From Thalia democratica (lineage: Eukaryota): a stretch of 64,000 nt of DNA. Location of the stretch: the NCBI GenBank assembly GCA_965202585.1, contig OZ241833.1, forward strand, positions 39,184,001 to 39,248,000, in the 5' to 3' direction. The position numbers were made by a program, and so were the translations under genes. Below are positions 13,966 to 62,347 of this stretch, one piece after another; the stretch's first letter is position 1; the number at the start of each line of letters is the position of its first letter. The notes under the pieces were generated by a model. That model worked only from the letters and a program-made list of their open reading frames with translations. It had not been told where the DNA came from and searched no databases.

Positions 13966-14402
13966 AATGTGATAATTGTAGTTTTGCTATCTACTGTGAT
14001 GTGGTAGTTGTAAAATTGCAGTCTACTGTGACGTGATAGTTGCAGTGTTACAATCTACTGTGACGTGATAGTTGCAGTGTTACAATGTACTGTGACGTGA
14101 TAGTTGTGTTGTTTCAATCTACTGTGACGTAATAGTTGTAGTGTTGATATCTTAATTGATAAGAGAGTTGTAAAATTGCAATCTACTGTGACGTGATAGT
14201 TGCAGTGTTACAATCTACTGTGACGTGATAGTTGTGTTGTTGTAATCAACTGTGAATTGATGGCTGTAATGTTTGTATCTATTGTGATTTGATAGTTGTA
14301 GTGTTGCTATCTACTGTGATGTAATAGTTGTAACATTACAGGCTACTGTGACGTGATAATTGCATCGCTGCAATCTACTATGATGTGATAATTTTATTGT
14401 TG
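13966..14402 (-). repeat. 32-bp minisatellite array (same family)
   Basis: About 13 units of ACTGTGACGTGATAGTTG(C/T)AGTGTTACAATCT; starts in the same phase (AATGTGATAATTGTAG) as the 12063 array. Confidence 0.9.
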
Positions 14403-17400
14403 CTAGTTCTAGAAGTTAATAAATGTCTGAAGCATTTTGTCAAACAAAAAATCTAACATTCAAGTATCACAAAAGTTTTCTTAGTTTCACAAAGACAAAA
14501 AAATAAATTTAAATAAAAATTTCTATATCACTTTAAAAACAATAAACTTTTATTTAATTCACTATCATAAAATAACTATTTCAAAAAAATGTACTAAACC
14601 GAATTACTGAAAGATATCTGTGTGATCTTAGAAGATAAATACTTTTGATAGTATTCTAGAAGATTCTAACTATCTGAAATTATTATGACTAAACATTAAG
14701 ACGAGCTCGACAATAAAGAATTTAAAAAAAGCTCCTTTGTGGTAAAAAGACAAAATATAATATAAATAAGTTTTAATTTTAACTTTCAACTTAAAAATAT
14801 TAAACTGTAAACTCAACTTACTCGAATTAAATAAATAATTTAAAAATAACTCTTTATGTCGTATACTTGCAAACTAAAAAGTATGTGTATAATTAAAAAA
14901 GTTAAAAGCTGAATGTACTCTGATGATTGCTGAATTACTCTCACCCTTTTTTGACATTAATATATTAAGATTATCTTTAATAGAAATTCTAAAAAAAACT
15001 AAAATTTAAACAAATAATTAGATTTTTTTGAATAATTTTCCTAGTAAATAAAGTTAAGAAGTAGATATAAAACTTACTATTAAGTTTTATATATTTTCTT
15101 AGTTTTAAAATTAAAAGATTAGGTTTTTAGATATAAACAAGATATAATTAATTTCATTGTTTTACAAAACCAAAGTATCTACTTGTTTTTTAAATAATCA
15201 TAAAATATATGTATGTTTTAAAATTAAAGGTGATTTGTTCAAATTAATTAAACTGAAATGACGCATAAAATTAATGTGTCAACAGATGTTTTTATTGCTA
15301 TCAAAATCTTAATATTTTTATTTTTGCGCCTGAAACAACGGTCACTTTTGTGAAGTATTATTACTGAAAGTTGTAAGAACTCTAACTATATATTAAGCTT
15401 CTAATTATTTAATGCTTAACACATATCTTTAAAGCAAAAATCAAGCATTACTTGTAAGTTTTTGAAAGTTAAAGTGTATATATAAATTGTAACGTTCTAA
15501 ACTAATTTGAATAGTTTTAACATTCATATCAAATAATATTTTTCTACATGATAATTTTAAAACTAGCAGTAATTAAAAAAAGTTAAACAGGTAACAATAA
15601 AAACGATAATTTTTATTATTTAATGTAAAATCAATTTGATAGAATACTTAAAAAAGATTGGTATTATTCTGATATCAAATCACTGATATTATAAGTGTTT
15701 GCCTATTGAAATAACTAAGCAATACAGTATTCTTTTTGTCTTAAAATGTAGAAAATATAAATAGAAAATAATTATTAAAAGAACTAATTAAGAAAAATTA
15801 AAAAAATTGTACGACGTTACCAATTAATCAAGCAAACTAAAAATACTTAAAAAAATATAATTGAATTTATTGAAAGTACGTGTTTATAAAAGAATTAAAA
15901 TAATAAACTAAGTTATAAGAGTTTACATTGAAGTTATAAAAATACTTAATATTCGAGTTATGTGTTTATAACAATTAAAGTAAAACATTAATCAATCTTA
16001 ACTTTTTCTAGTTTTTTAGTTAGGAGTATAGGAAATTTTGACACTTTTTTTACACAAATTGACACTATAGTTAATATAAAAGCTTTAAATACATAGTATA
16101 AGATACTTTATACTTTTATCAGATAAAAAATTATTACTAATATTAAATATAATATCAATTGTGTAAAACGTTTCTGATACAACCAAATGAAGGAAAATGA
16201 ACAAATGCTGTTTTTCTCTAAATTTTAAAAAATGACTTAAACTTTATTTTCCTTAATTTTTTGTCAATTAATCTCAAGCCTTTAGAAAATGTTCCTTGTA
16301 TGAAGAGAAAAAAATATCAATACATAAAAAACTATTATTAAGAATACAAAATCCTACCACAGAAATGTAAATTATTTAGTTAAGATTAAATTGAAAAAGT
16401 TTTACAACGATCGCTTAAAAGTTGTACGAGAAGATATATTTTGAATGAAATAGTTTTCTTTCAACTTTTTAGTTAGTTTTTCTCCAAGGAACCTATAGTG
16501 CATTCTGACTTTGAACCCTTATATCTCAAAAACTAATTCGAATTTTTTAAAACAAAAAGAGCAACTGTCAGCTAAGTTAAAATTTTTAAAATAAGATTAG
16601 TATGTACAAAACTGCTTCCTTATGCTCTTAAATTATACATGTATCATTTACTAAAAAAACTAAAAACTCTGCATCTTAAACTTATGCATCTTAAACTTTC
16701 TGTTTATCATTTTAAATCAAATACTACAACATTAATAAAAACATTTTGTGTTTTTTATTTTTTTGTAACTGTTTGTTTCAACATTTTTATAGAATTTAAA
16801 CTTCTGAATAAAGTTTTAAAACAAGTTAAAACAAACTCTATTTAATAGGGTATCAGGTTGATAATTTACACAGTTCTTTAAAACTGGTTATTAGTAAATA
16901 GTTTTATCAATAAATATTTTATATCAGGAAAAGACAGAAAAGTTAAAAATTCAGAAATTCAAACAGGATATATTTAGATATAAAAATTACGTTTTGCTTT
17001 TTATTTTTATATTTAAGATGATTAAAAAAATAAAATTTTTAAACAAACACAATAAAAAAGCTAATGTAGTCTCAAAAAGTATAGAATTATAAATCTAATA
17101 ATTTTTTGAAAACGTTACGTTTGATAATGTATTTTTATGATTATTAAACAAAAATAACAAAAATAAAAAAAAACAAAATACTACAAAACTTAAATTTACA
17201 TTATACGTATTTAAGGTAACCAGATTTTTTTTAACAATAGAGTTAAACTAGTATTCAGCAAAAATATTATTTAATTCTAAAAATTTAAGATGTTATATCT
17301 GAATATAGTATAATATAGGTAGTATAAAACCATTTAATACATAAATGTGTAAAAAAAATGTATTTCTTTGTCTCAGAATATTTCGATTGATCATAGTAAA

Positions 17401-20635: not shown

Positions 20636-22029
20636 ATTTGTTAAACCTTGTTTATATTTCAGAATTATTCAGTATCACATGGTTGATTATTATTTCTTTT
20701 GTTCAAAAAGAGTAATTGATTTTTTATATGTTAAATTGTGGAAAAAAACTTCAAGCCAGCTTTTATTTGTTGATCGAAATTTTTAATACATTGCAAACAT
20801 AGAATATACATAATAAACATTAATCTAAAGTTGTATTGCAATAGAATACTCACCTGCCATTACACTTGATTAAATATTTAATAATTTAAAGTCAGTCAAT
20901 GGAAACACAAAACATATAGTTTAAACAGAGCTTATGAAATATTGTCTTATGTTGATTTATTTTCAGACTTATGGAATTTTTAAAAAAAGTAACTCCTTTT
21001 CATTTCTTATGTGTTTTACTTTAAATTCTTGAGAAATGTTCTTTTTAATATTACAAAAAACTTGTAGGTAGCAGACTTTTGAAAAATTAGTTAAAAGAAG
21101 TATTAACAATAAAAAAAAACATATTTTTTGTTTATTTTTCATAACTGTTTTTTACAAAACGTAAATGTATTTTTCACAAATTGTTTAAAATTCCTTAAAG
21201 ACTCTGAAAAAGTTTCAAAATAATTTTCCAATAAATAAAGGAAAAGATAGTTTTTAGTGATATCTATTTTTGCTTTTTTTTATTTTGCTTGCAACTCCCA
21301 TTATGATCTGATAGAACGCTTAAAGCTTAAATCTAAAAAATAACTTTTTTCAATTTTTCAATAAAAATAGAATTTTAATAAGTAGTAAAAAACAACTGTT
21401 AGGGATATTAATTATGTAAAAAAATAGCACTAAATTTCTAAATCGAATTTTACTCCTAATACCCTATCTATTCATTTTTGTTTATAATCTATACAAAAGT
21501 AGTTATAAATTTTATTTTGTGTTGTTAAGGGTGAAATATATTTAAAACAGGTATTTTGGATTTTTATTATAAAATAACCTTTCAGTTGTTTTAAGTAATC
21601 CAGTATTTATTGTAGGTTACAGTTTTTATTTTCAATTTTTATGTACTCTTAGATCATAGATGTATAGTGTGCTAATCATTCACTTTGTATAAAATTAAAA
21701 TACCATTTTTTCATAATTCACATTCAATATTTCACTTAAAACTTAAGTTATAAGCTAAGTTAAGGATTGTCTTCTTTTTACATTCAATTTAAATTCATTA
21801 AAACGTTTTATGGTTGGTTTATTGTTTTATTTACAGTTTAAACTATGTTAATTTCAATTCTTTTTATAACATTTTTTAATGATTAAGTGTTTTTTTTGTT
21901 AAAAATTTTTGCAAACTTTTTATTTAAATAATTTGTAAAGTAGTACAATACTTAATATTTAATATATTGATATGTTTGAAAAAAATAATTTATTATTGTT
22001 TACTTACAGAAGTTTTATTTTTGTTTAAA

Positions 22030-25000
22030 ATGGACAAGTCTGAAAACAGCAATGCAAAAAATGGAAGTTAGTTTTTTTATAAAAAGTATTTAATAGTTGC
22101 AAATTTTTAACTAATTTCATGTTTACTTAATTTTACCATTTAATCACAATCAGTTCAAGGCTACATATTTTCTAAAGTTTTTTTGAAAAAAAGCTTTGTT
22201 TACTGTTTTACCAAAGTTTTATGTATAAGCTATTTGATAAATATTGTATAAGTAAAACAAGGTAGATAACTTAACAGATAAATCAGTTTTGAAATTTTTT
22301 ATGTAAAAATCTAGGAAAAGTAAGAAGTAATGACCAATTTTCACAGAGAATAAAAAAAAAAGAAAGATTTTGTTTTTAAAATTTTAGTTTAAGAATTTTT
22401 TTTTGAAATGAGAAACAAAAGAATTATACAATAAGATACACAGACACAATTTCAATAAAACTAGATATATTTTAAGCAATTCTCATCAGTAGAGTACAAA
22501 GCTAACAAGTAATAAGAATTTACAAAGTTATATAGTAACAATTAATTAAGTTATCATAAAGTAATTAATAGATTAATAAAAGACAAAAGTAAATAGTAAC
22601 CATTAAAATCATTTAAGTTTTCTTACTCTGTAATGATTTACAGTAAAACTAAACATAAGTAAAATAAAAACAACACTTTTAAAATATAACGAAAATAAAG
22701 CAACAGTATAGTCAAAATCTTATTGCTTACATAAAACAGGTTTTCTTAACAAAATACTTTATTTTAATTGAATCGGAAACATCACTACAAGTTTTAATGA
22801 CTTTAATTGTATTTAGATTAAAACTGTTTGCACAAGTTGAATTATTATTATTACAGCATAATTTGATAATAAGTATAACAATTTAATGCAGTAAATCAAA
22901 TGTGCTTTATTGATAAACCCAAACTGCACAAGTTTTGAAATTCTTTTTTTTTTTTGCTAGCTTAGTTAAATATAATTGGTGTATATGACCAACAGATAAC
23001 ACAAGCAAACAAAAATCTGATGTTTTAGACGAAAACTTTGTACAACAATTATTGCAGTCAGATCAACCTTTAAGCTCTAATAAACAAGGTAAGTTGTTTG
23101 TTATCAAGTTATCTTTTACAACAAAAAATTAGTATTTAATTTTGTTAAACTTTAAAAATTAATTGTACTCAAGTGATACTTTTTTAGTATAAACTAGTTA
23201 TAATGTCTATAACTTTAATAACATTTACATAATCATGCAATACAACTAAGTTACTGTATAATTTTTTGCTTTAGCTTAAATTATCAGACTTATCTTAAAA
23301 CCTACTTCTAATAAGTGACTTGTAGTGATTTTGTTAGGTGGTAAGTTTATTCTATTTTATTAGTTTATCAACATTTAAAATAAAATAGTAAATTGTATAA
23401 TTTATCAAATAAAAATTAGTTCATAAAACCCAGATCATTTTATTTTATACATATTTATCCTGTGCATAAACAATAAAATTATACAACAAAATTTGTTTTT
23501 GTCTTATTTATATAATTTATAAAAGTTTTTAATTGTAAACATAGGTTAAAAAGTATTGATTTCAAATTAAACAAAAAAAACATGGTCATAGAAATTGTTT
23601 TTTTTTTGTAAAAAGGTCAATACAAGTCAGAGGTTGCAATTATTTTAAAATAATGAGTCAGGAGCATGTTATGTAAGATAAAGACTTATACTTGAGCATA
23701 TTGTGACTTGTACAATTCTTATTTGGTGTGCTTAAATATGGTGTGGGTTATATCAAACTTTATTTTTACTTAGTGGACATGTGTTTTGTTTATTGGAAGT
23801 CTTTGAAAATTTAATTTTGTTATTTTTTATGAAAGTTATGTTTAAACTTCGGCTGTCCATGACCATTGATTTGTTGCACTGGAAGTTCTGCCCTTTATTG
23901 GTATAAAAATTGCCTTTTTGTTTCTAAAAACACCTACCATAAGAGTTTCTAGAATGTCTTAGCCCATAACTAATCTGTTTAAATTGTAGATAATTCTTTT
24001 TTAGTGACAGACCTGCTGATTTTGTTTTGGTTTCTTGAAACACCTGTTAAATTATTTCTTTAGATGGCGTTGTCTATTTACTTTACGGTCTTGCAGTTTA
24101 TTTCTTTTTTGGTAAGATGACTGCTAATTATTTTTTTCTTGAAACATCTTTTAAATAAATTTTTAGGATGTCCTTGTCATGTTTAAGTCACATGTAAAAA
24201 TCACATAACTTTGAAATTTTTAAAACGTAGTGATAAGCTTCTGGTTATCATGTCTTTTAACTGTTTTAGTATGAGGTGGTTTAAAAACAATTTCTGTAAT
24301 ATTTCCTTGTCTTTTAAATCATTAAGTCATATTTTGACTTCAAAGTTGAGGTCCTGGCCACTGACATAATGTGGTTGCTTTTTTGGTAGTAAAATCCTTG
24401 TCAACATTCCAGCATTTCTTACTAGGAAAGCCTGAAGCTTTTAATGTTTCTATCTCTACGGTTAGTGCTTAAGGTTTAGTTTTATTTTTCCCATATGTGT
24501 TTGTTTGGCCAAAAATCTAATTTATTCAGTCTTTTCAGTTTCATTAAAAATGCAATGGTCAGCCATACGTTTCTCAAAAAAAAAAGTCTTTTGTCTTTAA
24601 TATCAAATGTTTCAATTTTTCTAACTATTTCAATCTTATATCTTAAAATTTTAAGTTTTAAACACCTTGTTGGTTTGCCATCATGGCAGTATTGATATTT
24701 CTGATTTTACAGGTTCTACTACTGACATGTCCTGAGTCAGCTAGAACATACAATGTTCAGGTCTGATCACCAATTATGATCCCCGACCTGAGTTAAACAA
24801 TTACTTATAATTTTTAAATACAAACTAGTATTAACTGTCAAATATACATATGACTCTTGTAATAGTTGTGCTCAATAATGTTTATTCAACAAAGCAAAAC
24901 AAACAGACACAAACTAACATTAAAAAAATTTATAACACAGATAATAAAGAAACATAAATACTCTCTGGTGACAATTTTACAAATAAATGTGGTAAGAAAT

Positions 25001-27116
25001 AAAAATTAAAATTAACAAATTTGATATTTAGTTACAGCATGGGCATCATGTTGGATGGAGCACTGTAGCAAATGCTCTCCTAAAAAAAAGTTGATTAAAT
25101 ATAAAAATATTACAAAAGTTATCATTTTTCTATAAACTTGTGTTTATAATATGATATATGCAATTCCAACATTTTAATCATATTAAATTAGTTTAAAAAA
25201 TATCAAAATAAGAAGATTTCAAATACTTGCAAATTTTCCTTTATTTTACTAAAATATTGCCTTTATATGGGTACTCTAAATCAGCAAAAAGTTCTCACAA
25301 GGTACTTTTGTGATAATTGTCACATGTAAAACAATTTTCAGCTAAAGCAACATCCCTGGTCGATATGTTAGAAACCTTTTCACAAACACGCAAATATCTC
25401 AAGAGTTTATTAAAAGTTTTATAGTCTATAAAAAACTACTTATAAATTAACTTTTTTTATAAAGCCAACGTAATTTTTCTTTTTAATTACAGACAATTCA
25501 AGTGAATAGATCTCTAATGTTTTAGATGAAGATTTTTTATCCAAATCTTTGCAATCAGATAAACCTTCTAGCTCTATTAATCATAGTAGATTATTTTGTT
25601 TATTTTTCGTACACTTATCATTCTTACCTTTTATGAGTGAACTATATTTAAGGAATATACTTTTTCATTATGCGGAGAGTTAACACATTATTAAAATTTA
25701 ACCAAAGTCAAAACATTTTATTTATGTTTGGGACTCTTAATAAATTTATAAATTATTTCACAGTGAATTTCATAGTGATTGCTGGTTATAATACTTTGTG
25801 GATCGGTAAAAATTTTTAATTCTCCAAAGAAATAGATTTGTTACTATTATAACTATTTAAAATAAGTTTTTTGTTTGCTTTTGCTTTAGTTTACATTGAT
25901 ATTGAATTTAATTTGTAATAGATAAAACTTGCAATAGTATCAAATCACTTTTTTAGAGAATTAAAAGTTTTTACAGTTTTACAAAGTATTATAACAAGCA
26001 CCCACTTTAAAATTAGTTCACTATGAAATAATTTATAGATTTATCAAGAGTTTATGAACATAAATTAAATACTGATTTTAGATAATCATTACATTTAATT
26101 TACATATATTTTAACAATAAACTTTGTTATTAAATTTAAGTGAGTGTTTTTAGTACATATCGTAAATCGTTGAAACGATAAGAAAATATATTTAAGTTTA
26201 AAAGCACTAAAAACAAAGTTACATTGTTATAGTTATACAAGGTTCATTTTATTGATCATATTTAAATAAACAAAATTATAAGTTAAATTCAAAACTATTT
26301 TTAAATAAATTCATTAAATTATTTGCAGTTGACATGTATAGTGGAATCGAAAACAAGTTTGAATGCTCTGTATGTGAGAAGAAATTTTCATCTAAAAATA
26401 GTTTATATAATCATATGAATATCCACGATAAATCTTACCGATGTAAAGTTTGTCTGAAGTGTTTTGGAGGTAAATCTCTTCTAGCAGTTCATATGAGAAA
26501 GCACACTGTAGAAAAGCCCTACGTGTGTTCTACTTGTGATAAAAGATATTCTTCGAAGCAGAATCTTACTATTCACATGAGAAGCCACACGGGAGAAAAG
26601 GTCAACGTGTGTTTGATTTGTGACAAAAGTTTTTCTACCAAGCATTCTTTACAAAACCATCTGACCACACACAGTGATTAGAGAAAATTTAAGTGCGAGA
26701 TATGCCCAGAAGAAAGATACTTCAAAACTAAATATCAACTAAGCATGCATACGAAGCTACATTACGAACCAACTCATCAGTGTGAAGTTTGCCTGAAAAG
26801 TTTTCATTCTAAATCAGATGTTGTTAGACACATGAGAACGCACACGGGAGAAAAACCCTACGTGTGTTCTACTTGTGATAAAAGATTTTCTCTAAAACAC
26901 CACTTGAACCAACACCAGGCAATTCACAGTGATGAGAGAAAATTCAAGTGCAAGATATGCCCGGATGACAGATATTTCAAGACTAAAAATCAACTGAGCA
27001 GTCATATGCGTTTCCACTATGAGCCAAAACATTCATGTTTTCATTGTAACAAGAAGTTTCACAATTCAACAAACTTGAAAAACCATGAGAAACTAAAACA
27101 TGCTAATAAAATTTAA
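22030..27116 (+). pseudogene. C2H2 zinc-finger locus 1 (9 fingers) with two in-frame TAG codons
   Basis: Exons 22030-22066 (MDKSENSNAKNG, 37 nt), 22996-23088 (93 nt), 25493-25585 (93 nt, TAG at 25507-25509) and 26329-27116 (finger exon, TAG at 26679-26681 between fingers 4 and 5, same frame on both sides). All are GT-AG and phase 1. The repaired product is 336 aa; skipping exon 3 gives a 160-aa, 4-finger protein. Confidence 0.75.
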
Positions 27117-28158
27117 ATTTTTTGTGCAAAATATTTTGTTTAATACTTAAAATATTCAAGGTTTTTCTAATTTGTTACATTGAAAGTTTTAGACCTTTCT
27201 TTCAAAACTTGAAATTTGACTAAATGCTAACACAAGTATGACTTCTAATACTTATTAAATCTTAATCGTTTCGTAAATGTTGTCTTCTTTCAATAAAATA
27301 CATTTAAACAAGGTTTACTTTAGTATGACAATAAACAATGATATATCATTAGATAGAAATTTCTAAATATAAATAATGAATTTGTATACTTTTAAATATT
27401 TGTTTTAAAAATATTTCAATACTTTTATCTACATACAGTAGTATTTATAGTTTAAAATTCTTAAGTACGTTATAAGTGTTTTTTTTATTTATTTAATAAC
27501 TTAAAGTAGTTTATTAAACTAAAATTTTTAGAAAAGTATGTAGTTAAGTAATTACCATGAATTTATACAAACTATGTGTCAACAAAAGTTTTCAAGATAA
27601 AACTATATTCAAAATTAATTCTAGTAGTGTATACTCAAGTTTAGTACTGTTATTTAAGCTTTTGTTTTAACAAATAGGTGTTTTAGGGTAGTATACTAAT
27701 TAGTTCAAACAAATTGATTTTGTGATAAAAACTTTAACTTTTTTCAAATGTTTATTCTGATTTACAATAGTGGCAGTTGTTTTCTAGTTTTATGTTGCTT
27801 GTTTTACTAGTAAATCACCTTACAATCTTAAACTAAATATGTGAAACTGAATGTGTGCTTAAGTTGTTTAAGTTTTTACCTTGTATAATTGCTGTGGTTG
27901 CTATATGATCAACTATATCAAACAGCCAGTTGATATATTTTTTCACAATAAAAATATTTATACTTCAGCTTTAAAACCTTAATCAATTAACACAGAACAT
28001 TTTTGTCAATGGAAGCAGTATATGCGTTATACAAATATCACATAACTATATATTTTATAAAAGTATTTCAAGACAGTATTTTTAATTTATCAGTTATCTA
28101 TTTTATATAATTATATTTCAAAAGATTATTGTTGATTAATCAGTTTCTTAATAGAAAA

Positions 28159-31100
28159 ATGGATATACTTGGAGGCAGCATTGTGTTAAATAAAAGTTAG
28201 TATTATTTATGTATATTTTCTAAATTTAGATAAATAAAATTTTATCAAGTATTCTAAATTATTGTCTCTTCAATATAAAAGTATTTTTTTTATTATACTC
28301 TTTTTAATTAAATGACAGTTATTATAAAAACAATTTTTCTAAATTTTCAGATTTGAACCAAGCTGAACTGTTGATGACAGGCTTGAAACATATTATTCAA
28401 AAGCAAATCACAGAAAATCAAAATTTAGAAAACAAGAATTGCTGTTTAGAAATGGATAATAAAATTCTTGCTGATAAAAACACTGAATTGTTAAATGAAA
28501 ATAAGAAGTAAGTGAAAAAGTTTGAATTTTAACCACAATCAATGTTTCAAATAACTATTTTATTGTTATAACATTAGTACAAAATATTTTTAGTAAATAA
28601 ACATTGACAAAGATTATTTAAGATGTTTTATGGTATGAAACAATCCTAAATATTTTATATTGGTTCAGTTTAAAAACACAAAATTATCACAGTTTTGAAA
28701 TGGAGAATAAAAAAATGGCTGAAGCACAAGATAGATTAAAAAATAAAATTGAGGTGTTAAAAAAAGACCTCATTTTGAAAAATTCAGAGTGAGTATCAAT
28801 ATTTTTAAAGATTCTTAAATAGTTCAAGACTTTATCAAAATTAATTGCTTTTGTTATAGCTAAGTTTTAAAATTTATATTCAATAATTCAATAGTCAATG
28901 TAAAATATGCTATGTTAGTGAGAAGCAAAGTAGTATGGTCATAGTGTTTAAGATTAACATAAACTACCTGATATATATTTTTGTTTCATAAGTAATATTT
29001 TTGGAAGTACCTAAGATTTAGTATTAACTATTAATTAGTATTTAAAATATTGTCTAAGGTAGAAGTTTTTGCATTTTACCCCTCATGACATCATCACAGT
29101 GAAAAAATGTGATCAAAACTACTTATTTCTTGTTAAATAAATAAACTTTTATATAGAAGTATTGCTTGATTAGAAATTTATGCAATTTAAGTCAATCATC
29201 AAATTAAGTTTCTCTTTTTTTTAAATAATTTAATTTATCTAGATTACAAAATATCAAAAGATGTTTCTTTTTGGATCAATTTAGTGAAAAAGATGAAACA
29301 TCATACAATAATCAGAATGGTAAAAAAAGTTTTGAAATTTTCTTTTTTAATGTACACTTTGAAAATTTTTGATTTATGTAGATACCACAACAGATTCATC
29401 AGAAGCAATCTCTGAAAATGCATTGGTTAATGATTTGAATGAATTCAAAGGAGAACAAAAAGATTTTAGTGATAATATTGTGAATGTATCAAAGGGAAAT
29501 AAAGTAACACCAAATAATTCTCAGTTACCTCAATGTTTAGACAAAACTCCTGAGAACAGAGCTAGTAAGTTTGAAAGTTTTACTTAATTTATATGAAACT
29601 TTGTTTACACGTTTAAACTTTTAGAAGCTGAAAACTCAAGTTTTAACAACCACACTTCAAAAGCAAGTTATGTTGAATCAATGCAAATTGAATCAGATGA
29701 GTTATTGACCACTGATGAAAATTCAGGTGACAGCAGTTTAAGACAAGGTAAATTAATGGTTTCCAAAAAAAAAGTACAAGCTTGTTAGAAATAGTAAATT
29801 GTTTATAATGTTTTAAATGTTATAAGTTTTTTAAACAGTCACAATCAGCTTGTTAAGCTTTAAAATGGAAAATTTACTATATGTTCTATTGAAGTCTGCA
29901 TATTAAGTTTTTATGTTTTACTAAGATTATTTATAAAATTACCCTACAGGCATTGGAAAAACTAGAGTTAAGAATCGCATAAATAATAGAAGTTATTGTC
30001 AAAGTTCTGAAAAAAAATCATTACATATTGATATTAACTTAAATGCTAAAGGTAGATAGTTTAAGCAATTATTTATTTTTTAACTATACTGTTCATTTTT
30101 TGCTGTCATTTAGTGTAAATAAAATTAAAACAAAAGATTTTTTTTTCGTATAAAACCTTTCCATCATTTAAATTATGTTTTACCACTTACGACTTATATT
30201 ATCATGCAACAATTTCTATGGTATGTGTTTTTCATCTCAGTATTTTTAAAAGTATTATTTATTAACAGAAGAGAAAAATGTTTACTCAAAAAATCTAAAT
30301 CCAACTTCTAATGACGAAATTGGGCCTGAAAGTAATAAAAATTTAAACTTGTTTTTAGATGGTGAAATTTCAAATACTGTTGACAACAGCTCAACAGAAT
30401 TTGTTGACAAAGGTATTTATTTTTTTGTAACTTGATTAATTTTTTATTGTTGAATATACCAATGTATAAAAAAAAAAGTATAATATAATGATTTATTTGT
30501 AAGTAAATGTCTTTTTAGTTTTTTAATTCATCTTTTTATCAACTTGAATTGCATAATAATCAGTATTTTATTATAAAAGGGCAAGCTTGTTTTTAATTTT
30601 ATTTATTATTTTTATTTAATTTATAAGTTTTTACCTCTAATTTTATCTTTATATAATATTTTCAACATGAAACAACTTCTAACAAAGCCTACAAAAGAAA
30701 AATTTATAAAACAAATAAATTAATAGACAGACAAAAACAAGAGTGTTAATAACATTGTTTGTCAAACTATCATGCCTTATAAAAAAGCAAAAGCTTTTTC
30801 TAATATTCAGCACTAAAATAAGACTAACTATATCATTTGTAGGTGACATGTATTGTGGAAACGAAAAAAAGTTTGAATGCTCTGTATGTGATAAAAAGTT
30901 TGCCTCAAAAAAAACTTTATGTAATCATAAGAAGATACACGATAAAACTCATCAGTGTGAAGTTTGTCTGAAGTGTTTTGGAACCAAGTATCAACTTACT
31001 GTTCACATGAGAACTCACACGGGAGAAAAACCCTTCGTGTGTTCTACTTGTGATAAAAGATGCACTACAAAAAGTAATTTAAAAAGTCATCAGGCAACTC

Positions 31101-31168
31101 ACAGTGTTGAGAAAAAATTCAAGTACAAGGTTTGCCCAGATGACAGATATTTCAAAACTAAAGATTAA
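28159..31168 (+). CDS. C2H2 zinc-finger locus 2: coiled coil + acidic spacer + 3 intact fingers (414 aa, 9 exons)
   Basis: Exons 28159-28195, 28351-28507, 28693-28788, 29243-29319, 29382-29564, 29625-29747, 29950-30051, 30269-30412 and 30843-31168 join with GT-AG boundaries and consistent phase into a 1245-nt stop-free ORF; HTGEKP linker; degenerate fingers continue 31169-31430. Confidence 0.8.
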
Positions 31169-32400
31169 TCAAGTAGGCATATGAAGTTATTTTTATGTGA
31201 ACCAATGTTCTTGCACTAACTGTAAAAGAAGCTTCACACTTCATCAGGTTTTAATCAACATGTGAAACTTCATTACGATTATAAATATTCTTGCTGATAA
31301 TGCTAGAAGATATTTCACTGTTAATCTTACTGAAAGAAGACATGAACATTTTGAACCCAGTTACTCTTGTGCAAGTGTTGTAAAACGTTTTATACTTTAG
31401 CAAGTTTGAAAAGATATGAAGTTACTTATTAAAACCCAGTGGCCGTCACATATGAAACAATTAATTTTAAGGTTAAAAAAAATACTATATAAGTTTAATT
31501 TCAGTATAAACAATTAATGTAAACTTATTAATATTTTACAGCAGTAAATTTAAGTTTTTTATTAGTGAGTGGCATTCTTTTACCTTTAAAAATATTTTTT
31601 GTGTACCATTTAATATTTCATTGTTCTTTAATTAAATAAAAATTCATTTACCTTTTAAAGGGTTATCACACACCTAGGATAAAAAAATATTTTGAAATTT
31701 TGAAAATCTCAGGTATCTCATAGAACTCAGGAAAAACTAAAGAGTTATTTTTTTTTTGAACACGAATGACTCAGGATAGATATTTTTAACGTAGAAATAT
31801 AAAACTCTCTATAATTAAATTTGAAAAAAAAAATTAAAAACTATAAGTAGACAATTTGACCTTTAAATCAAATTATCTTCAACATGTACAAAAGCTATAT
31901 ACTATATTGTAGCTTTTTATGAACTGGTTGAAATTTTTAGTTTTCTTTTATTGATTAAAGTATTTTGCTTCACATAAAATAATACTTTCTTTAATGTATA
32001 AAAAAAAAAGTAAAATATTATTTTATCTTCAAGTACAATATTTTTTTATTTATGATAGCTCTAAATTAAACAATTTTCATTTTTATACTTTTTTTGCTTT
32101 ATTTAGATGCTATTTATAGTTGAAATCTTATATCAACTTTACCCGACACCTTTTAACTCTTCACTAGTTGATATATTACCAGATTCACACTAAAAATCTT
32201 TATATTTCAGCTTTAAAACCTTAATCAATTAACACAGAACATTTTTGTCAATGGAAGCAGTATATGCTTTATACAAATATCACATAACTAAATCTTTTAT
32301 AATAGTATTTCAAGACAGTATTTTTAATTTATCAGTTATCTATCTTATACAACTATATTTCAAAAGAGTATTGTTGATTAATCAGTTTCTTAATAGAAAA

Positions 32401-34385
32401 ATGGATATACTTGGAGGCAGCATTGTGTTAAATAAAAGTTAGTATCATTTATGTATATTTTTTAAATTTATATAAATATAATTTATTCAAGTATTTTAAA
32501 TTATTGTCTCTTCAATATAAAAGTCATTTTTTTATTATAATCTTTTTTATTAAATGACAGTTATTATAAAACATTTTTTTTTTAATTTTCAGATTTAAAC
32601 CAAGCTGAATTGTTGATGACAGGCTTGAAACATATCATTCAAAAGCAAATCACAGAAAATCAAATTTTAGAAAACTAGAATTGCTGTTTAGAAATGGATA
32701 ATAAAATTCTTGCTGATAAAACACTGAATTGTTAAATGAAAATAAGAAGTAAGTGAAAAGTTTATTTTGAATTTTAACCACAATCAATGTTTAAAATAAC
32801 TATTTTTTTTATAACATTAGTACAAAGTGTTTCAAGTAAATAAACATTGACAAAGATTATTTAAGATGTTTTGAGGTATGAAAAAATCATCAATATTTTA
32901 AATTGGTTCTGTTTAAAAACACAAAATTATCACAGTTTTGAAATGGAGAATAAAAAAATGGCTGAAGCACAAGATAAATTAAAAAATAAAATTGAGGTGT
33001 TAAAAAAAGACCTCATTTTGAAACATTCAGAGTGAGTATCAATGTTTCTAAAGATTCTTAAATAGTTAAAGACTTTATTAAAATTAATTGCTTTTGTTAT
33101 AGTTTAGTTTTAAAGTTTATTTTCAATAATTCAATAGTCAATGTAAAACATGCTATGTTAGTGAGAAGCAAAGTAGTATGGTCATAGTGTTTAAGACTAA
33201 CATAAACTACCTGTATATATTATTGTTTCATAAGTAATATTTATGGAAGTACCTAAGATTTAGTATTAACTATTAATTAGTATTGAAAACATTGTCTAAG
33301 GTAGTCGTTTTTGCATTTTACTCCTCATGACATCATCACAGTGAAAAAATGAGATCAAAACTAATTATTTCTTGTTAAATAAATAAACTTTTACGTTGAA
33401 GTATTGCTTGATTAGAAATTTATGCAATTTAAGTCAATCATCAAATTAAATTTCTCTTTTTTTTTATAATTTAATTTATCTAGATTACAAAATATCAAAA
33501 GATGTTTCTTTTTGGATCAACTTAGTGAAAAAGATGAAAAATCATACAATAATAAGAATGGTAAAATTAGTTTTGAAAAAAAAAATAATTAAATGTACAC
33601 TTTAAACATTTTTAATTTATGTAGATACCACAACAGAATTATCAGAAGAAATCTCTGAAGATGCATTGGCTAATGATTTGAATGAATTCAAAGGAGAACA
33701 AGAAGATTTTATTGATTATATTGTGAATGTATCAAAGGGAAATAAAGTAACACCAACAAATTCTCAGTTACCTCAATGTTTAGACAAAACTCCTAAAAAC
33801 AGAGCTAGTAAGTTTGAAAGTTTTTCTTAATTTGAATGCTCTGTATGTGATAAAAAGTTTGCCTTAAAACAAACTTTATGTAATCATAAGAAGGTACATG
33901 ATAAAACTCATCAGTGCGAAGTTTGTCTGAAGTGTTTTGGAACCAAGTATAAGCTTACTGTTCACATGAGAACTCACACGGGAGAAAAACCCTTCGTGTG
34001 TTCTACTTGTGATAAAAGATGCACTACAAAAAGTAATTTAAAAAGTCATCAGGCAACTCACAGTGTTGAGAAAAAATTCAAGTACAAAGTTTGCCCAGAT
34101 GACAGATGTTTCAAAATTAAAGATTAATCAAGTAGGCATATAAAGTTTTTTTTATGTGACCCAATATTCTTGCACTCACTGTGAAAAGAAGCTTCACACT
34201 TCATCAGGTTTTAATCAACATATGAATCTTCATTACGAACATAAATATTCTTGCTGATAATGCTAGAAGATATTTCACTATTAATCTTACTGAAAGAAGA
34301 CATGAACATTTTGAACCCAGTTACTCTTGTGCAAGTGTTGTAAGACATTTTATACTTTAGCAAGTTTGTAAAGACATGAAGTAAC
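32401..34385 (+). pseudogene. C2H2 zinc-finger locus 3: duplicated, deleted pseudogene copy of locus 2
   Basis: About 90% similar by eye to 27925-31430 (offset 4242 at the 5' end); TAG at 32676-32678, a 1-nt deletion in exon 2, and intron 5 fused directly to the finger exon at 33831-33833. Confidence 0.88.
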
Positions 34386-34934
34386 TAATTATAGAATTGC
34401 TAAATTATTTTTTCATTTTACTTGCTAAATGATAATAACTTAAAAAAAAAACAGAAAAAGTTTTTAATTTTACTTTTTTTAAATTGTGTTGAGTTAGTTT
34501 TGAATTTGTGAAAAGTCTATTGAATCATATTGGAAATTATTTAGTAATTATGGTTTCCTATGTAAACCATTATAAATTATGTAGTCTCTTGTTATTAATA
34601 AGAAATAAGAAATTATAACATCTATATTACTAAATTATGTTTATTTATATGTAAAAGCTTGTTTATGAGATTTATTTTAATTCAATTTTTGATTAAAAAA
34701 AATTAGTTTTGAACAAAAATCACTAAAAACCTGAAAACCCTTTATTTTTGAATAGATTTACATGTTAGATATTCTAACAATAATACAAAAATTTTTTACA
34801 CAAAACATTTTTTAAATTTTATTCTTACTCTTCTATTTCTTGATGTGAAATTATTCATTAAATAATTATTTCATTATCTAATTCATTTTAGATACATTTA
34901 CAGGAAACTTAATAATTATTATGTTATGATGAAA

Positions 34935-37900
34935 ATGGACAAAGTAGAAAAAAGCAAGGTGTTAAAAGAAAGTTAGTTTTATTTTTTAAAAATATTGAAC
35001 TTTTGTAAATTTATCAATATATACCTTTAACAATTGGTTTTATCTTATTTTTTAATAAAAATTTTTTAAAAACCATATATTTTTATTAACAAAACAAAAA
35101 AGTTAACCATTTAAAAAAAATTAAATCATAAACTTTTATATACTTAAAATTTATAGATTTATTACATGTCGTAAAAGAGTTCTTAAAATTAATGTTTATC
35201 CTGAAAGAAATTAATTCTTTTATTTACTTTTAGTTTACTTTTATAGATTCTAGTAAATTAGCTATAAATTTCTTAATGCTATACAATTGTGGTTTTTTTT
35301 ACTGGGTATGCCTCAAAGGCTAGTTGATTTGTTTTATTGCATATAAAGTTTAGTAATTTTTCAAATAAAAGCCAATGTTAGTTTCTGTAATAAAAAAAAA
35401 ATTGAACACCCCTACAGCCACAAATTATTTAAAATTAATTTTAGTATATATCAAACTAGAAGATGGAAACTCAAGTTTTAACAACCACACTTCGAATACA
35501 AGTGATGTCGAATCGATGCAAATTGAACCAGATCAGTTGTTTAACAATGAAGAAAATTCGAATAAGAGTCACAAAAATTCAAGACAAGGTGTGTTTAAAA
35601 GTTAAAATTAAAATTTTTACTTATTTGTAATAAAACGTTTTATACCTCTTAAATGCTCTATACTAGTTTTGTTACTTTTGAACATTTTGAATTAACTATT
35701 TTAGCTTTAAGGCAAAATTACTATATAAGCTCCAATAAAATTTGTTGTACATAAATAAACTTTTATGTTATGATAAATATTATACCATAAACTTTAATAA
35801 AATGATCACTCTACAGGGATTGAAAAAATCAGAGCTAACGTCCACGTAAATGATAGAAATGATTCTCAAAGTTCTGAGAAAAATCAATCAGATACTGGTA
35901 TAGACTTAAATGCTAAAGGTAAATAACTTAAATAGTATTCACTTCTAATTTTTTGATTTTTCTACCAAGTAAACAAAAAAAGTAAAAAAAGGAAATTTTA
36001 AACTTAACACGTTTGTAACACCTGTTTAGTCACAGAACAGCTTATTAATCAATTATTTCAACATTCAATAAGTTCTATGAAAACTAATTAAAGTATAAGT
36101 TTTAATTTTCAAATTGTTTTCATACTAAATGAATTAACAGATGATTACTCGAAAAATGGCAATCAAAACTCAAATGACAACAAATTGATAAAAACTGAAC
36201 ATGAAAGTACTGAAAATTTAAGCTTGCATTCTGATGGTGAAGTTCCAATTGCTATTGACAACAGAACAACAGAATCTGCTAAAAAAAGTAATTATTCATT
36301 ATTATTTACTTGGTTGTTCACTCATTAATTAATTTATAAGTTTTAGAAATAATTTATGGAGTTTAGAAGTTGAGGTATTTTAAAATAAATTTGAGAATTT
36401 TTGTTAGTAAATGTTTTTTTTGCTTTATATGCCTTATGTTTTATTTTTCATAAGATAGTGTTTTTTTTTTCTGTCATTAAATTAAAAAAAAAAAGCTTAT
36501 ATAAAAAATGTTATTATTCATCACAATTAGATTTCTCCCGAATGATATAAATATGTATATATTATTTACTTCTCTGTTACTTTTACTTCTTAACATGTTT
36601 TTGTCTATTTAGTACATATTTGTCAAAGAAAAAAAATAACAAATCTACAAAACCAAATTATGATAGATTGTATAACATACTTACTGAATATCAACTAATT
36701 TATTTTGGTGAGTTATATTTTTTTATAAATCAAGGTTTATAAAAAGATATAAATGAGTTCACAATTTAAACACCTATATAGATGTATTGTATAAAAACAA
36801 TTGGCAGCTATTTTAGATAAATATTTAAAATATAATTTTCATATTAGTTAAAAATTTTTGAAAAGGTGAAAATCTTAGGAATCATTTTAAAGTAATTAAT
36901 GAAGCTTAACTAATTGGCTGCAATTAGGCAAAAAGTCATTGAAACTTTATGCTTCACTAAATAGTTTCGCTGCTTACTATAAATAATAATTAACTATAAA
37001 AAAAAAGTATATTTTTAATTATTATTAGAAAAATCTAATTTAGTTTTAAAACAGTAAAAACAATAAAATAAAAATTCGAAGTAATTAACTTTTGCACCTA
37101 AATAAATAGATTAACATTTTTGTTTATATTTTTGTTTAAAAATAACATTGTTTTTTCTACTCATATCTGATTTTATTTGTTAATATTTGTACCAGTTTAT
37201 TAAAATTTTTTGTTCTATATTTTTTCATCCTTGAGTCATTTGGTACTTTCTAATCCTTCATAGGCTCGTTTTGATTTCGTAAAATATGTTTTTTTGTGCT
37301 TTGTTTAGACGTTTTGACTACTAAATTTATTTTTTAATACATATTCTTTCACTTTTTCGTTAAAAGATAATTTATTAAAAGTTGCAATGTATATTAAACA
37401 GTTGTAAGTTCAGAACGAAAAGTTTCTTAAAGTGATTAAGTTTTTTTTTGTTTACAACCACTGACATTAAATGTCTGAATTTTTCAATGAATATAATTAA
37501 AAATTTGTACATTATAGCAACTAATCCAAAAAACTTTTTACAAAATATCATATAGTTCTTATACCTAATAAGTTGCTAATATAACTTGAAGTTACATGTA
37601 ATTTGTAGTAATTTAATTAAAACTGATAGTTTCGCTTTTAATGTTAAAAACTGAAGTTAAGGAAATTACAAACTTTAAACAATATATGGATTCATCGAAA
37701 TAAATCTGTAGTTATAGATGTTAATAATTTTATTAATATTTGTTTATAAGGTTGGACATTATAGAATTACTTCATATATTAACAAAATTTTATAATTAAT
37801 TTTTACAGTTTAGTATACAGTTAGCTAATGTTTTATAATTTTTTTTGTTGTACACTGCCCTAAGTAAAGTGAAGTAATTTGTATTTAGTTTAAGTTTTAT

Positions 37901-39774
37901 ATACATACAAAAAATTATTATGTTTAAGAAATGTTAAGTTTTATATTTTATAATCTTATATTTCAAAAACATAAACAACGACTACTTAAAAAGACTATTT
38001 TTAATAATAAAATTTTCTGCACAAGTTGTAATAATCTTAAGATCAAATATTTTTATTCACACAATTTATGTTTTAGTTAATTAACAGATAATTCAAGTGA
38101 ACAAAGTTCTGCTGATTTAGATGAAGATTTTGTACCTGATTCTTTGCATTCAGATCAATCTTCTAGCTCTAAAAGTAAAAGTTAGTTGTTTTTAATAGTA
38201 ATATTGGTAGATTACCCTTGTTTTTCTTAAAAATCCTTAAAACTAATAATGTTTTGTATAAAAGTGTTGTAAATTAAATACATGCTTTTATTGAAACAAT
38301 TTTTAAACTATATATGCATATGTAGTGAGTAATACTTTTAAAACATTGAATAAAAAGCAAGTTTGCAAAACTGAATAAAGATATTTTTTTTAGTTACTTC
38401 ATGATTTTAATTTTGAACGAGTTAATGTTTTAAATATGAGTAAAAAAAACTTATATGTAACATTTTATTTAATAAATACTAAGTTGGGTTAATTTAATGG
38501 TTGTTTATTTGTTTTGGCGAACATATAACTTATATTTTTATTTTATATGAATGGCTAAAAAGTATCAAATAGTAAGTGTATATTTGAAAATGTTTACTTT
38601 AAGTTTTGTTATTAACTTTCTAAACAGTTTATATGAAAAGTTAATACAATTTAATCTCTTAAGTAAATTTGATTATATTGATGCTGTTAGTTTTTTGTTA
38701 TAAACAATTAGTTTTTTATAAGTTTTTTTGTTGTGCTATTAAATAGTTACTCCTTATTTAGTATAAATATTTTATTTTTTAAATTTTAATGTAATAAGAT
38801 AAAAGTGTTCAAGTTTAAAAAATGACAAAACAACAAAGTCTGTTTAAATTTCGTACATGCTTTTCGACTGATATACATTAGAAAAATACAAAGAGTATTG
38901 ACTTATATCTCACATTTTTTGGTATAAAACAAAAACTGGTTCACACGTTTTTCGTATTTAAAACTCAATTTATTAAGTGTTCCAAAATAAACCAATGTTT
39001 TTGTCAAAAAATTTTGATCTGCTTTGCTTTTAAATATCAACTGAATATTAAACAAAACACCACATAATCTACTTATTTACAGTGATTTTGATTTATTGTT
39101 GAACTTGTTAGAGACGTTTATGAATATAGCTTATAGGTAATCATTAATATCAAAATATACGTTAGAAACTGTTTATTTTTTATTTAACAATAAGTTAAGT
39201 TTTTATGTAGTAATACTATTATATGTATATTTATTTACTTTCAGATGGTAGTTCGGCGCTCAAGAAAAATGAAAAACAATACAATTGCTCTGTTTGTAAG
39301 AAGAAATTTTCTAGTAGAAAAACTTTTTACCGCCACAAAAATGTTCACAATAAAAGCCATCAGTGTGAAGTTTGCTTGAAATATTTTGGAAGCAAAGTTC
39401 TTCTAAGTAAGCATATGAGAACTCACACTGGAGAAAAACCCTACGTATGTTCTACTTGCGATAAAAGATTTGCTCGAAAAGATGCTTTACAAAACCATCA
39501 GGCAACTCACATCTATGAGAGAAAAATCAAGTGCAAGATATGCCCGGATGACAGATATTTCAAGACTAAAAGCCAACTGAGCAGTCATATGCGTTTCCAC
39601 TATGAACCAAAACATTGTTGTATACGTTGTAATAAGAAGTTTCATACTTCGTCACATTTGAACGAACACATGAAATATCATTTTGAACCGACTTACGCTT
39701 GTGCAAAATGTGGTAGGAAATTTCACACATTAGCTAATTTGAAAAGACATGAAAAAAGAAAAACAGGATGTTAG
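34935..39774 (+). CDS. C2H2 zinc-finger locus 4: acidic spacer + 6 fingers (last one C2HC-like), 345 aa, 6 exons
   Basis: Exons 34935-34971 (MDKVEKSKVLKE; an in-frame ATG also at 34926), 35460-35588, 35817-35918, 36141-36287, 38088-38180 and 39245-39774; all phase-1 GT-AG junctions, 1038 nt without internal stop. Confidence 0.82.
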
Positions 39775-61944: not shown

Positions 61945-62347
61945 TAATTGTGCTAAAATGTGTTCAAAGTAGGAAGCATCTTACTGCTAACATGAGAACA
62001 AACACGGGAGAAAAATTACAATTTGTTCTAATTGCGATAAAAGATTTGCTCAAAAACAACATTTACAAAGACATCAGGCAACTTACAGTGATGAGAGAAA
62101 ATTTAAGTGCAAGATATGCCCTGATGACAAATATTTCAAAGCTAAAGGTCAACTGAGTATTTACATGCGTTTTCATAATGAACAGAAACATTCTTGCCTG
62201 CTATGTAACAGGAAGTTTTATACTTCAACACATTTGAAAGAACGTATCAAGTATTATTTTAAACCAACTTACTCTTGTGCAAAGTGCGGTAAAAAATATC
62301 ATACCTCTAGTAGTTTAAATCATCATAAAGAAAGCAAAAATTGTTAG
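61945..62347 (+). pseudogene. C2H2 zinc-finger locus 5 remnant (finger exon only)
   Basis: NTGEK linker, a frameshift, then CSNCDKRFAQKQHLQRHQATY-SDERKFK-CKICPDDKYFKAKGQLSIYMRFH-...-CAKCGKKYHTSSSLNHHKESKNC*, colinear with the locus 4 fingers; several Zn-binding His are lost; no upstream exons recognised. Confidence 0.82.

What the first reader, a model, noticed from the sequence alone, without database searches (positions are those of the whole stretch)
22030..39774. Zinc-finger cluster assembled combinatorially from symmetric phase-1 exon modules
Seen: every locus starts with aaaATGGA..., a 37-nt exon ending A|GTTAG (22030, 28159, 32401, 34935) and ends in one finger exon. Between them are interchangeable 3n-length phase-1 exons: X (93 nt; 22996, 25493, 38088), A (183), B (123/129), C (102/102) and D (144/147). 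Locus 1 = X+X'; locus 2 = coiled coil+A+B+C+D; locus 4 = B+C+D+X. Established: symmetric-phase exons can be gained, lost or skipped without frameshift, and clustered fast-evolving C2H2 genes (KRAB-, ZAD-, SCAN-ZNF) pair an effector domain with a finger array. No KRAB, ZAD, SCAN, BTB or SET domain is recognisable here. Inference: an undescribed lineage-specific ZNF family diversifying by exon shuffling and birth-death, possibly targeting the surrounding TEs.
Basis: partly seen in the sequence, partly recalled or inferred. Interest (0 to 1): 0.7.

Follow-up and report, generated by a model that had tools for sequence, protein, structure and literature searches.

The report
Modular-exon zinc-finger gene cluster
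Four neighbouring copies (only one intact) of a zinc-finger regulator gene family, with no relatives found outside marine metagenome fragments, have front ends made of small in-frame exons; the different layouts come mostly from exon loss among tandem copies, so this is one more lineage-specific zinc-finger expansion, not a new kind of gene assembly.

Summary
Four + strand loci each start with a 37-nt ATG exon (donor A|GTTAGT) and end in one C2H2 finger exon. Exons X, A, B, C and D sit at the stated coordinates, with 3n lengths, phase 1-1 and AG/GT borders.

Corrections:
- Only locus 4 is intact (345 codons).
- Locus 1 has a private TAG in its finger exon and a stop in X'.
- Locus 2 carries an old shared TAA after three fingers.
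- Locus 3 is a dead copy of locus 2 with a 1,281-bp deletion.
- The coiled coil is three exons (phases 1>2>2>1).

The loci are a slice of a cluster of about 1.1 Mb holding at least 42 finger-exon units. In all 32 multi-module units the order is E1-zipper-A-B-C-D-X-fingers, and the commonest form is E1-zipper-A-B-C-D-fingers. The layouts are therefore collinear subsets produced by deletion, exon duplication and unequal crossover, not free shuffling.

The modules match no Pfam family, evolve fast and look disordered, but stay open and end at conserved splice sites. Module A carries a SUMO-consensus-like motif.

This scan had already noted a leucine-zipper zinc-finger family on other contigs of this genome, probably the same superfamily. 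No RNA data were available, so splicing, expression and TE targeting are untested.

The parts
22030..22066 (+). Locus 1, first coding exon E1 (37 nt, ends in phase 1)
   Evidence: ATG, donor GGAA|gttagt; pattern hit
22996..23088 (+). Locus 1, exon X (93 nt, phase 1-1, open)
25493..25585 (+). Locus 1, exon X' (93 nt duplicate of X) with an in-frame TAG at 25507-25509; a dead or skipped exon
26329..27116 (+). Locus 1 finger exon with nine fingers, interrupted by a private TAG at 26679-26681 after finger 4
   Evidence: paralogous copies have open frames of 270-277 aa, the window copy 141 aa
28159..28195 (+). Locus 2, E1 (37 nt)
28351..29319 (+). Locus 2 leucine-zipper block: CC1 28351-28507 (157 nt, phase 1>2), CC2 28693-28788 (96 nt, 2>2), CC3 29243-29319 (77 nt, 2>1)
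   Evidence: heptad a/d pattern of Leu and Asn; 78 CC1-like open exons in the genome
29382..29564 (+). Locus 2, exon A (183 nt, phase 1-1) with a psi-K-x-E motif
29625..30412 (+). Locus 2, exons B 29625-29747, C 29950-30051 and D 30269-30412 (all phase 1-1)
30843..31440 (+). Locus 2 finger exon: three fingers, then a TAA at 31166-31168, then frameshifted finger remnants
   Evidence: all five copies of this type are truncated (open frames 98-149 aa)
32401..34391 (+). Locus 3: pseudogene copy of locus 2 (93-95% identity) with a TAG in CC1, a 1-nt deletion and a 1,281-bp deletion that fuses the A intron to the finger exon
34935..34971 (+). Locus 4, E1 (37 nt)
   Evidence: 23 genomic copies with flanks
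35460..36287 (+). Locus 4, exons B 35460-35588 (129), C 35817-35918 (102) and D 36141-36287 (147)
38088..38180 (+). Locus 4, exon X (93 nt) with the acidic D-L-D-E-D-F motif
39245..39774 (+). Locus 4 finger exon, intact: five C2H2 fingers (one atypical, C-x2-C-x14-H) plus a terminal C2HC-like finger
61991..62344 (+).

Best explanation
The region is a slice of a tandem cluster of about 1.1 Mb holding one lineage-specific C2H2 zinc-finger transcription-factor family. Earlier scan notes call the organism a salp or pelagic tunicate; I did not verify that.

The fullest gene form has these parts, in this order:
- a 37-nt ATG exon;
- a three-exon leucine zipper, inferred to mediate dimerisation;
- a string of small phase 1-1 exons (A, B, C, D, X) that encode a fast-evolving, acidic, Ser/Asn-rich, probably disordered effector or linker region carrying short motifs;
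- one terminal exon with 5-9 fingers built from a stereotyped triad that includes an atypical C-x2-C-x14-H finger.

Every internal block starts and ends in phase 1. Deletions, tandem exon duplications and unequal crossovers between neighbouring paralogues therefore yield in-frame genes holding collinear subsets of the modules.

In the window, locus 4 is an intact derivative that lost the zipper and A. Locus 1 is an E1-X-fingers form with a dead duplicate X' and a private nonsense mutation. Locus 2 is a zipper-A-B-C-D form with an old truncating stop. Locus 3 is a dead partial copy of locus 2.

Shown: the exon anatomy, family size, collinearity, open-frame retention and disabling mutations. Inferred: splicing, DNA binding, dimerisation, effector role and any role in TE control.

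Family size:
- At least 52 finger-exon DNA matches, mostly at C9 38.49-39.57 Mb.
- 4,413-4,433 first-look finger candidates genome-wide.
- Module hits: X 33 by DNA and 12 by protein; B-C-D 45; zipper+A 59; CC1 78, A 37, B 39.
- Nearly all module copies are open. All 37 copies of the 60-codon A are open, against about 0.4% expected at this base composition (my estimate).

Exons behave as real exons:
- L2 versus L4 identity is 80/75/65% for exons B/C/D but 59/56% for the introns, against a shuffled baseline of about 51%.
- In 10 metagenomic homologues of A, similarity begins and ends at the predicted splice sites. The next codon is Ser or Gly (that is, xGT) in all nine that continue past the junction, which implies a conserved phase-1 donor.
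- A divergent CC1 exon elsewhere in the cluster is also exactly 157 nt.

Collinearity and direction of change:
- 32 of 32 multi-module units are in the same order, and 13 are E1-zipper-A-B-C-D-fingers.
- The L4-type first exon is normally followed by CC1 about 0.9 kb downstream, but in L4 and its three close copies by B about 0.5 kb downstream. No zipper or A remnant is left in that intron.

Disabling mutations:
- The locus-1 TAG is private: 4 of 6 copies have open frames of 270-277 aa.
- The locus-2 TAA is shared by all 5 copies.
- Locus 3 carries the 1,281-bp deletion.

Module character:
- No Pfam match for any module.
- Module A has only 11 hits among 1.84 billion proteins: 10 short genomic ORF fragments and one spurious hit.
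- The AF2 model of A has pLDDT 61, pTM 0.16 and no secondary structure.
- The zipper heptads have Leu/Asn at a/d positions.

Selection:
- Finger dN/dS is 0.29, against about 0.94 pooled for B-C-D.
- Variability across fingers is highest at helix positions -1, +2, +3, +5 and +6.
Against: - There is no transcript evidence. The only public runs that hold the stretch are DNA, because their contigs cover the introns.
- Three of the four window loci are disabled.
- dN/dS near 1 in modules C and D is also what neutral decay would give.
- Four recent duplicate pairs show no excess of changes at DNA-contact residues: 4/92 versus 42/721, p = 0.81.
- The architecture map outside the window and the fetched 200 kb rests on hit coordinates only. 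Weakly conserved exons could have been missed.
- The direction of change (loss versus gain) is inferred by parsimony, not from a rooted tree.
Confidence: 0.72

Rival explanations
1. One reading: the family actively diversifies by exon shuffling, assembling new effector regions combinatorially from interchangeable modules, as an adaptive response (for example to TEs).
For: - At least 8 different layouts exist: E1-ZF, E1-X-ZF, E1-X-X'-ZF, E1-zipper-X-ZF, E1-zipper-A-X-ZF, E1-zipper-A-B-C-X-ZF, E1-B-C-D-X-ZF, and E1-zipper-A-B-C-D(-X)-ZF.
- Units at C9 39375898-39368933 (minus strand) and on contig C1145 join locus-2-type B-C directly to locus-4-type C-D-X. That is what unequal crossover between diverged paralogues would produce.
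Against: - Order is never permuted in 32 units.
- The commonest form is the near-complete one.
- Locus 4 is explained by a single deletion.
- There is no sign of positive selection in the data at hand.
- No link to TEs was tested.
Confidence: 0.15
2. The cluster here is essentially a graveyard. The units are non-functional copies carried along by large segmental duplications, and the 'modules' are decaying remains of one old gene.
For: - 3 of the 4 window loci plus the fragment at 61991-62344 are disabled.
- dN/dS is about 1 or above for C, D and A.
- The truncated locus-2 type is copied five times with its stop.
- No RNA evidence exists.
Against: - Locus 4 and its copies are intact.
- About 90% of the 140 listed finger matches have no stop, with open frames of 130-435 aa.
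- All 37 copies of A, all 39 of B and 71 of 78 CC1 copies are open, at identities down to about 40%.
- Exons are far better conserved than introns.
- Finger dN/dS is 0.29.
Confidence: 0.08
3. The symmetric exons are mainly alternative-splicing cassettes. Each gene makes several isoforms by skipping, and genomic presence or absence is secondary.
For: - All the exons are 3n and phase 1-1, so skipping keeps the frame.
- X' of locus 1 must be skipped for any product to be made.
- Synonymous sites in the exons are better conserved than the introns, as expected if the exons carry splicing enhancers.
Against: No RNA data are available. The genomic presence/absence differences are real and suffice to explain the layouts.
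Confidence: 0.3

Closest known systems
Leucine-zipper zinc-finger family noted by this scan on other contigs of the same genome (notes s1-301247, s1-301209)
   Same: Both are tandem arrays with a short first exon, a leucine zipper spread over small exons and one terminal finger exon. CC1-like exons related to locus 2's occur at 78 or more places, including other clusters (C9 2.0-3.1 Mb, C8 30.0-30.1 Mb, C6, C7).
   Different: This cluster has extra phase 1-1 exons (A, B, C, D, X) between the zipper and the fingers. Some members (loci 1 and 4) have no zipper at all. I could not read the other contigs, so identity of the two families is inferred from hit coordinates only.
KRAB zinc-finger genes of tetrapods
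   Same: Both are large tandem clusters with birth-and-death turnover. The effector is encoded on small exons upstream of one exon holding the whole finger array, and the DNA-contact residues are variable.
   Different: No KRAB domain is present (Pfam). There is a zipper for dimerisation, and the effector region is disordered and multi-exonic. A TRIM28-type corepressor link is unknown.
FiNZ zinc-finger genes of cyprinid fish (Wells et al. 2023, PMC10547256)
   Same: Both are lineage-restricted and have a short acidic N-terminal sequence with no similarity to known domains, on its own exon ahead of a single finger exon. Both have hundreds of copies.
   Different: FiNZ is one conserved 28-residue exon, whereas here there are up to nine small exons with presence/absence variation. 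FiNZ genes have been shown to be expressed at zygotic genome activation and to repress LTR elements. Nothing of that is known here.
SCAN, ZAD and BTB zinc-finger families
   Same: Each has an N-terminal dimerisation module ahead of C2H2 arrays, and each has undergone lineage-specific expansion.
   Different: Those are folded domains with Pfam models, and none matches here. Dimerisation here would be through a plain leucine zipper, and it is optional.

Membership tests
C2H2 zinc-finger proteins | Tandem C-x2-4-C-x12-H-x3-5-H fingers that match Pfam zf-C2H2 | tested here: met
   PF00096 at E 1e-13 to 1e-24 in all finger exons. Fingers are listed.
KRAB-ZNF | KRAB A (and B) box, Pfam PF01352, N-terminal to the fingers | tested here: not met
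   No Pfam hit at E<=1 in any N-terminal module.
SCAN-ZNF, ZAD-ZNF, BTB-ZF, PRDM | SCAN (PF02023), ZAD (PF07776), BTB (PF00651) or SET domain | tested here: not met
   No Pfam hit at E<=1 in any module. Exons were scanned one by one; the joined protein was not scanned.
FiNZ-ZNF | Conserved 28-residue FiNZ exon; restricted to cyprinid fish (PMC10547256) | not tested
   No FiNZ sequence or model was at hand. The comparison rests on the paper's description only.
Leucine-zipper ZNF family of this genome (scan notes) | Leucine zipper encoded by small exons after a short first exon | tested here: met
   Met for loci 2 and 3 only: Leu/Asn at heptad a/d positions in CC1 and CC2, and 78 related exons. 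Loci 1 and 4 have no zipper exon.
Leucine-zipper ZNF family of this genome (scan notes) | Five-exon gene with four or five fingers | tested here: not met
   Window genes have 3 to 9 coding exons and 3 to 9 fingers. They fit as a derived subfamily, not the canonical form.

The most novel reading that the evidence does not exclude
The small symmetric exons may form an effector code. The zipper would give dimerisation. Module A would be a SUMO-acceptor, 'synergy-control'-like motif (psi-K-x-E-P-E-D-F). Module X would be a VP16-like acidic-hydrophobic motif (D-L-D-E-D-F). Module B would be a conserved cofactor-docking motif. Recombination and deletion among tandem paralogues would then re-pair these effector motifs with different finger arrays. 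The family would diversify what it does at a target as well as which target it binds, a dimension not described for KRAB, ZAD or FiNZ families.
Probability: 0.2. Interest if true: 0.65.

Novelty: new member of a known kind. Interest (0 to 1): 0.45.

Why it matters
Lineage-specific zinc-finger expansions (KRAB, ZAD, SCAN, FiNZ) are the standard example of fast regulatory evolution, and in vertebrates they are tied to transposon control. Here is another independent case in a poorly studied marine chordate lineage, with thousands of finger exons. Its effector region is split into in-frame, droppable exons, which lets one ask whether effector parts are re-paired with DNA-binding arrays. It also gives a clear exon map for annotating a genome that has no public RNA data.

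Tried and rejected
- **Read evidence.** The only three runs that hold the stretch are DNA. Their contigs cover introns evenly, and the listed 'joints' have 21-nt sides in low-complexity DNA. Junctions could therefore not be tested.
- **Fetching the cluster.** The rest of the map rests on hit coordinates. I did not try to obtain more genome letters by another tool.
Every search was exon by exon.
- **Pfam** on all modules found nothing. **ESM Atlas** on module A gave no usable hit.
- **Exhaustive protein search with module A** gave only 10 short genomic fragments plus one spurious bacterial Rib-repeat protein. No spliced full-length protein was found.
- **Word-index search with the finger exon** gave only unnamed metagenome fragments at 47-76% identity and generic ZNFs at 39% or less.
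- **Internal homology between modules** was weak: A versus C z = 4.7, B versus X z = 3.0, out of about 60 comparisons. I did not rely on it.
- **Excess change at DNA-contact residues** in recent duplicates was not seen.
- **Alternative genetic code** as an explanation of the in-frame stops was rejected. Each stop is a single-base change from the sense codon of paralogues, and paralogous copies are open.
Full report
**Observation**

The window is very AT-rich (GC 0.20-0.29 across the finding).

- There are four + strand loci. Each starts with aaaATGGA and a 37-nt coding exon that ends A|GTTAGT (22030, 28159, 32401, 34935).
- Each locus ends in a single finger exon.
- Exons X, A, B, C and D lie at the stated positions, with 3n lengths and phase 1 on both sides. 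All have AG acceptors and GT donors.
- A strict pattern for the first exon hits exactly these four places in 64 kb. It hits six more in 200 kb of the same cluster, each upstream of a family exon. The feature is homologous, not chance.
- Pfam finds only C2H2 families in the finger exons and nothing at E<=1 in any N-terminal module.

Only locus 4 is intact. Its exons of 37+129+102+147+93+530 nt give 345 codons plus a stop.

- In locus 1, X' carries an in-frame TAG (25507). The finger exon carries a TAG at 26679, where paralogues read GAG.
- In locus 2, the finger exon stops at a TAA (31166) after three fingers, followed by frameshifted finger remnants.
- Locus 3 is a 93-95% copy of locus 2. It has a TAG in CC1, a 1-nt deletion and a 1,281-bp deletion that removes B, C, D and the finger-exon acceptor.
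- The coiled coil is three exons of 157, 96 and 77 nt with phases 1>2, 2>2 and 2>1.
- A fifth, decayed finger fragment lies at 61991-62344.

**Context**

The window is C9:39184001-39248000 of an 802-Mb assembly.

- The locus-4 finger exon has at least 52 DNA matches, mostly at C9 38.49-39.57 Mb.
- Protein queries with finger pieces give more than 4,400 first-look candidates genome-wide. About 90% of the 140 matches listed are stop-free, with open frames of 130-435 aa; one search looks the same.
- Module searches give 33 X hits by DNA and 12 by protein, 45 B-C-D, 59 zipper+A, 78 CC1, 37 A and 39 B.
- Nearly all are open. For the 60-codon A, all 37 copies are open at identities down to 39%. I estimate about 0.4% of random frames would be open at this base composition.
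- The window's triplet (locus-1 type, locus-2 type, locus-4 type) recurs about six times, four direct and two inverted, at 91-98% identity.
- A 50-kb tandem segmental duplication lies in the 200 kb I could fetch.

**Are the small exons real?**

No RNA run holds the stretch. The three runs found are DNA, since their contigs cover the introns. Splicing is therefore inferred, and the indirect evidence is good.

- Between loci 2 and 4, exons B/C/D are 80/75/65% identical, but the introns between them are 59/56%, against a shuffled baseline of about 51%.
- In ten metagenomic homologues of A, similarity starts and stops at the predicted splice sites. The codon that follows is Ser or Gly (xGT) in all nine that continue past the junction, which implies a conserved phase-1 donor.
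- A divergent CC1 exon elsewhere in the cluster is also exactly 157 nt.

**Shuffling or loss?**

From the hit coordinates I assembled 42 finger-terminated units at C9 38.76-39.58 Mb.

- All 32 units with two or more modules have the order E1 < CC1 < A < B < D < X < fingers.
- Thirteen are E1-zipper-A-B-C-D-fingers, and two add X.
- Other layouts are E1-zipper-A-B-C-X, E1-zipper-A-X, E1-B-C-D-X (locus 4 and three close copies), X-fingers (locus-1 type) and E1-fingers.
- In the fetched 200 kb I read an intact E1-X(87 nt)-fingers gene, an E1-fingers gene and an E1-CC1-CC2-X-fingers gene.
- The locus-4 type of first exon is followed by CC1 about 0.9 kb downstream in eight other genes. In locus 4 and its three close copies it is followed by B about 0.5 kb downstream, with no zipper or A remnant in that intron.
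- Locus 4's nearest relatives in B-C-D (89% identity) carry A upstream, and one of them also CC1. Locus 4 is therefore a deletion derivative.
- Two units (C9 39375898-39368933 on the minus strand, and contig C1145) abut locus-2-type B-C to locus-4-type C-D-X. That looks like unequal crossover between paralogues.

The variety is real, but it consists of collinear subsets plus a few recombinants. It is not free assembly.

**State of the window genes**

- The locus-1 TAG is private. Of six copies of this type, four have open frames of 270-277 aa, one has a TGA, and the window copy is open for 141 aa.
- The locus-2 TAA is shared by all five copies of its type, with open frames of 98-149 aa. It therefore predates the segmental duplications. 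Whether a three-finger product is used is unknown.

**Nature of the modules**

- CC1 and CC2 put Leu and Asn at heptad a/d positions over four to five heptads, which is a leucine zipper.
- A, B, C, D and X are 65-80% disorder-promoting residues and mostly acidic.
- An AF2 model of A with a 12-sequence alignment has pLDDT 61, pTM 0.16 and no secondary structure.
- A carries a nearly invariant psi-K-x-E-P-E-D-F motif, with E24 invariant and K22 in at least 90% of sequences. This matches the SUMO consensus. That reading comes from my own knowledge and is untested.
- X carries D-L-D-E-D-F, which resembles acidic activation motifs. This too is inference.
- B keeps S-S-F-N-N-H-T-S and V-E-S-M-Q-I-E.
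- dN/dS between loci 2 and 4 is 0.57 (B), 1.2 (C) and 1.2 (D), pooled 0.94. It is 0.29 for fingers. The modules are held open and keep motifs, but otherwise drift.
- Against 1.84 billion proteins, A finds only ten short genomic ORF fragments and one spurious bacterial repeat protein.

**Fingers**

- The array is built from a triad that includes an atypical C-x2-C-x14-H finger (P-D-D-R-Y-F-K-T-K). That finger is present in 72 of the 120 retrieved relatives, and the locus-4 array and several relatives end in a C2HC-like finger.
- Across the family, variability is highest at helix positions -1, +2, +3, +5 and +6.
- Four recent duplicate pairs show no excess of change at contact residues: 4/92 versus 42/721, p = 0.81.
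- The closest database relatives are unnamed marine-metagenome fragments at 47-76% identity. Named proteins are generic ZNFs at 39% or less.

**Comparison with known families**

In kind this is like the KRAB, ZAD, SCAN and FiNZ families. All are lineage-specific tandem expansions with small upstream effector exons and a single finger exon (Wells et al. 2023, PMC10547256). None of those domains is present here.

This scan had already noted a leucine-zipper zinc-finger family on other contigs of this genome (notes s1-301247 and s1-301209). CC1-like exons at other clusters make it likely that the present cluster is a subfamily of it, with extra linker exons.

The identification of the organism as a salp or pelagic tunicate comes from those notes. 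I did not check it.

**Limits**

- TE targeting, expression, dimerisation and effector activity remain untested.

Noticed in passing
window 12185-13048 and 13969-14403: Two arrays of a 32-bp minisatellite (about 28 and 14 copies, 68-75% matches) with higher-order periods of 122-217 bp.
   Followed up: partly
window 6255-7754 versus 22254-18627: An inverted duplication at 81-83% identity. One arm covers the promoter, first exon and start of intron 1 of locus 1. No intact first exon survives in the inverted copy.
   Followed up: partly
window 22005-22029, 28150-28158, 34900-34934: Each first exon is preceded within 4-35 nt by a pyrimidine-rich tract ending in AG (ttacag, ttaatag, tttacag). That would fit an upstream 5'UTR exon or a spliced-leader trans-splice acceptor, as is usual in tunicates. 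This is untested.
   Followed up: no
window 29625-30412 versus 35460-36287: Synonymous sites of exons B-D differ by about 23%. The flanking introns are near the random baseline, and dN/dS is about 1. Something other than protein sequence (splicing enhancers, or exon-limited gene conversion) may conserve these exons.
   Followed up: partly
L010-L020 (C9 38573424-38671346): A tandem segmental duplication of about 50.4 kb at 82-97.5% identity carries four to five family genes per copy. One of them has a nine-finger exon.
   Followed up: partly
window 61991-62344: A decayed finger-exon fragment of the same family, in which several zinc-binding His residues are replaced by Tyr. It lies just beyond the LTR element noted by others.
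   Followed up: yes
whole genome G000: More than 4,400 first-look candidate places for this type of finger exon. Further clusters lie on C9 (2.0-3.1, 32.7-33.8, 37.2-37.4 Mb), C8 (18.2-19.0 Mb), C4, C6 and C2.
   Followed up: no
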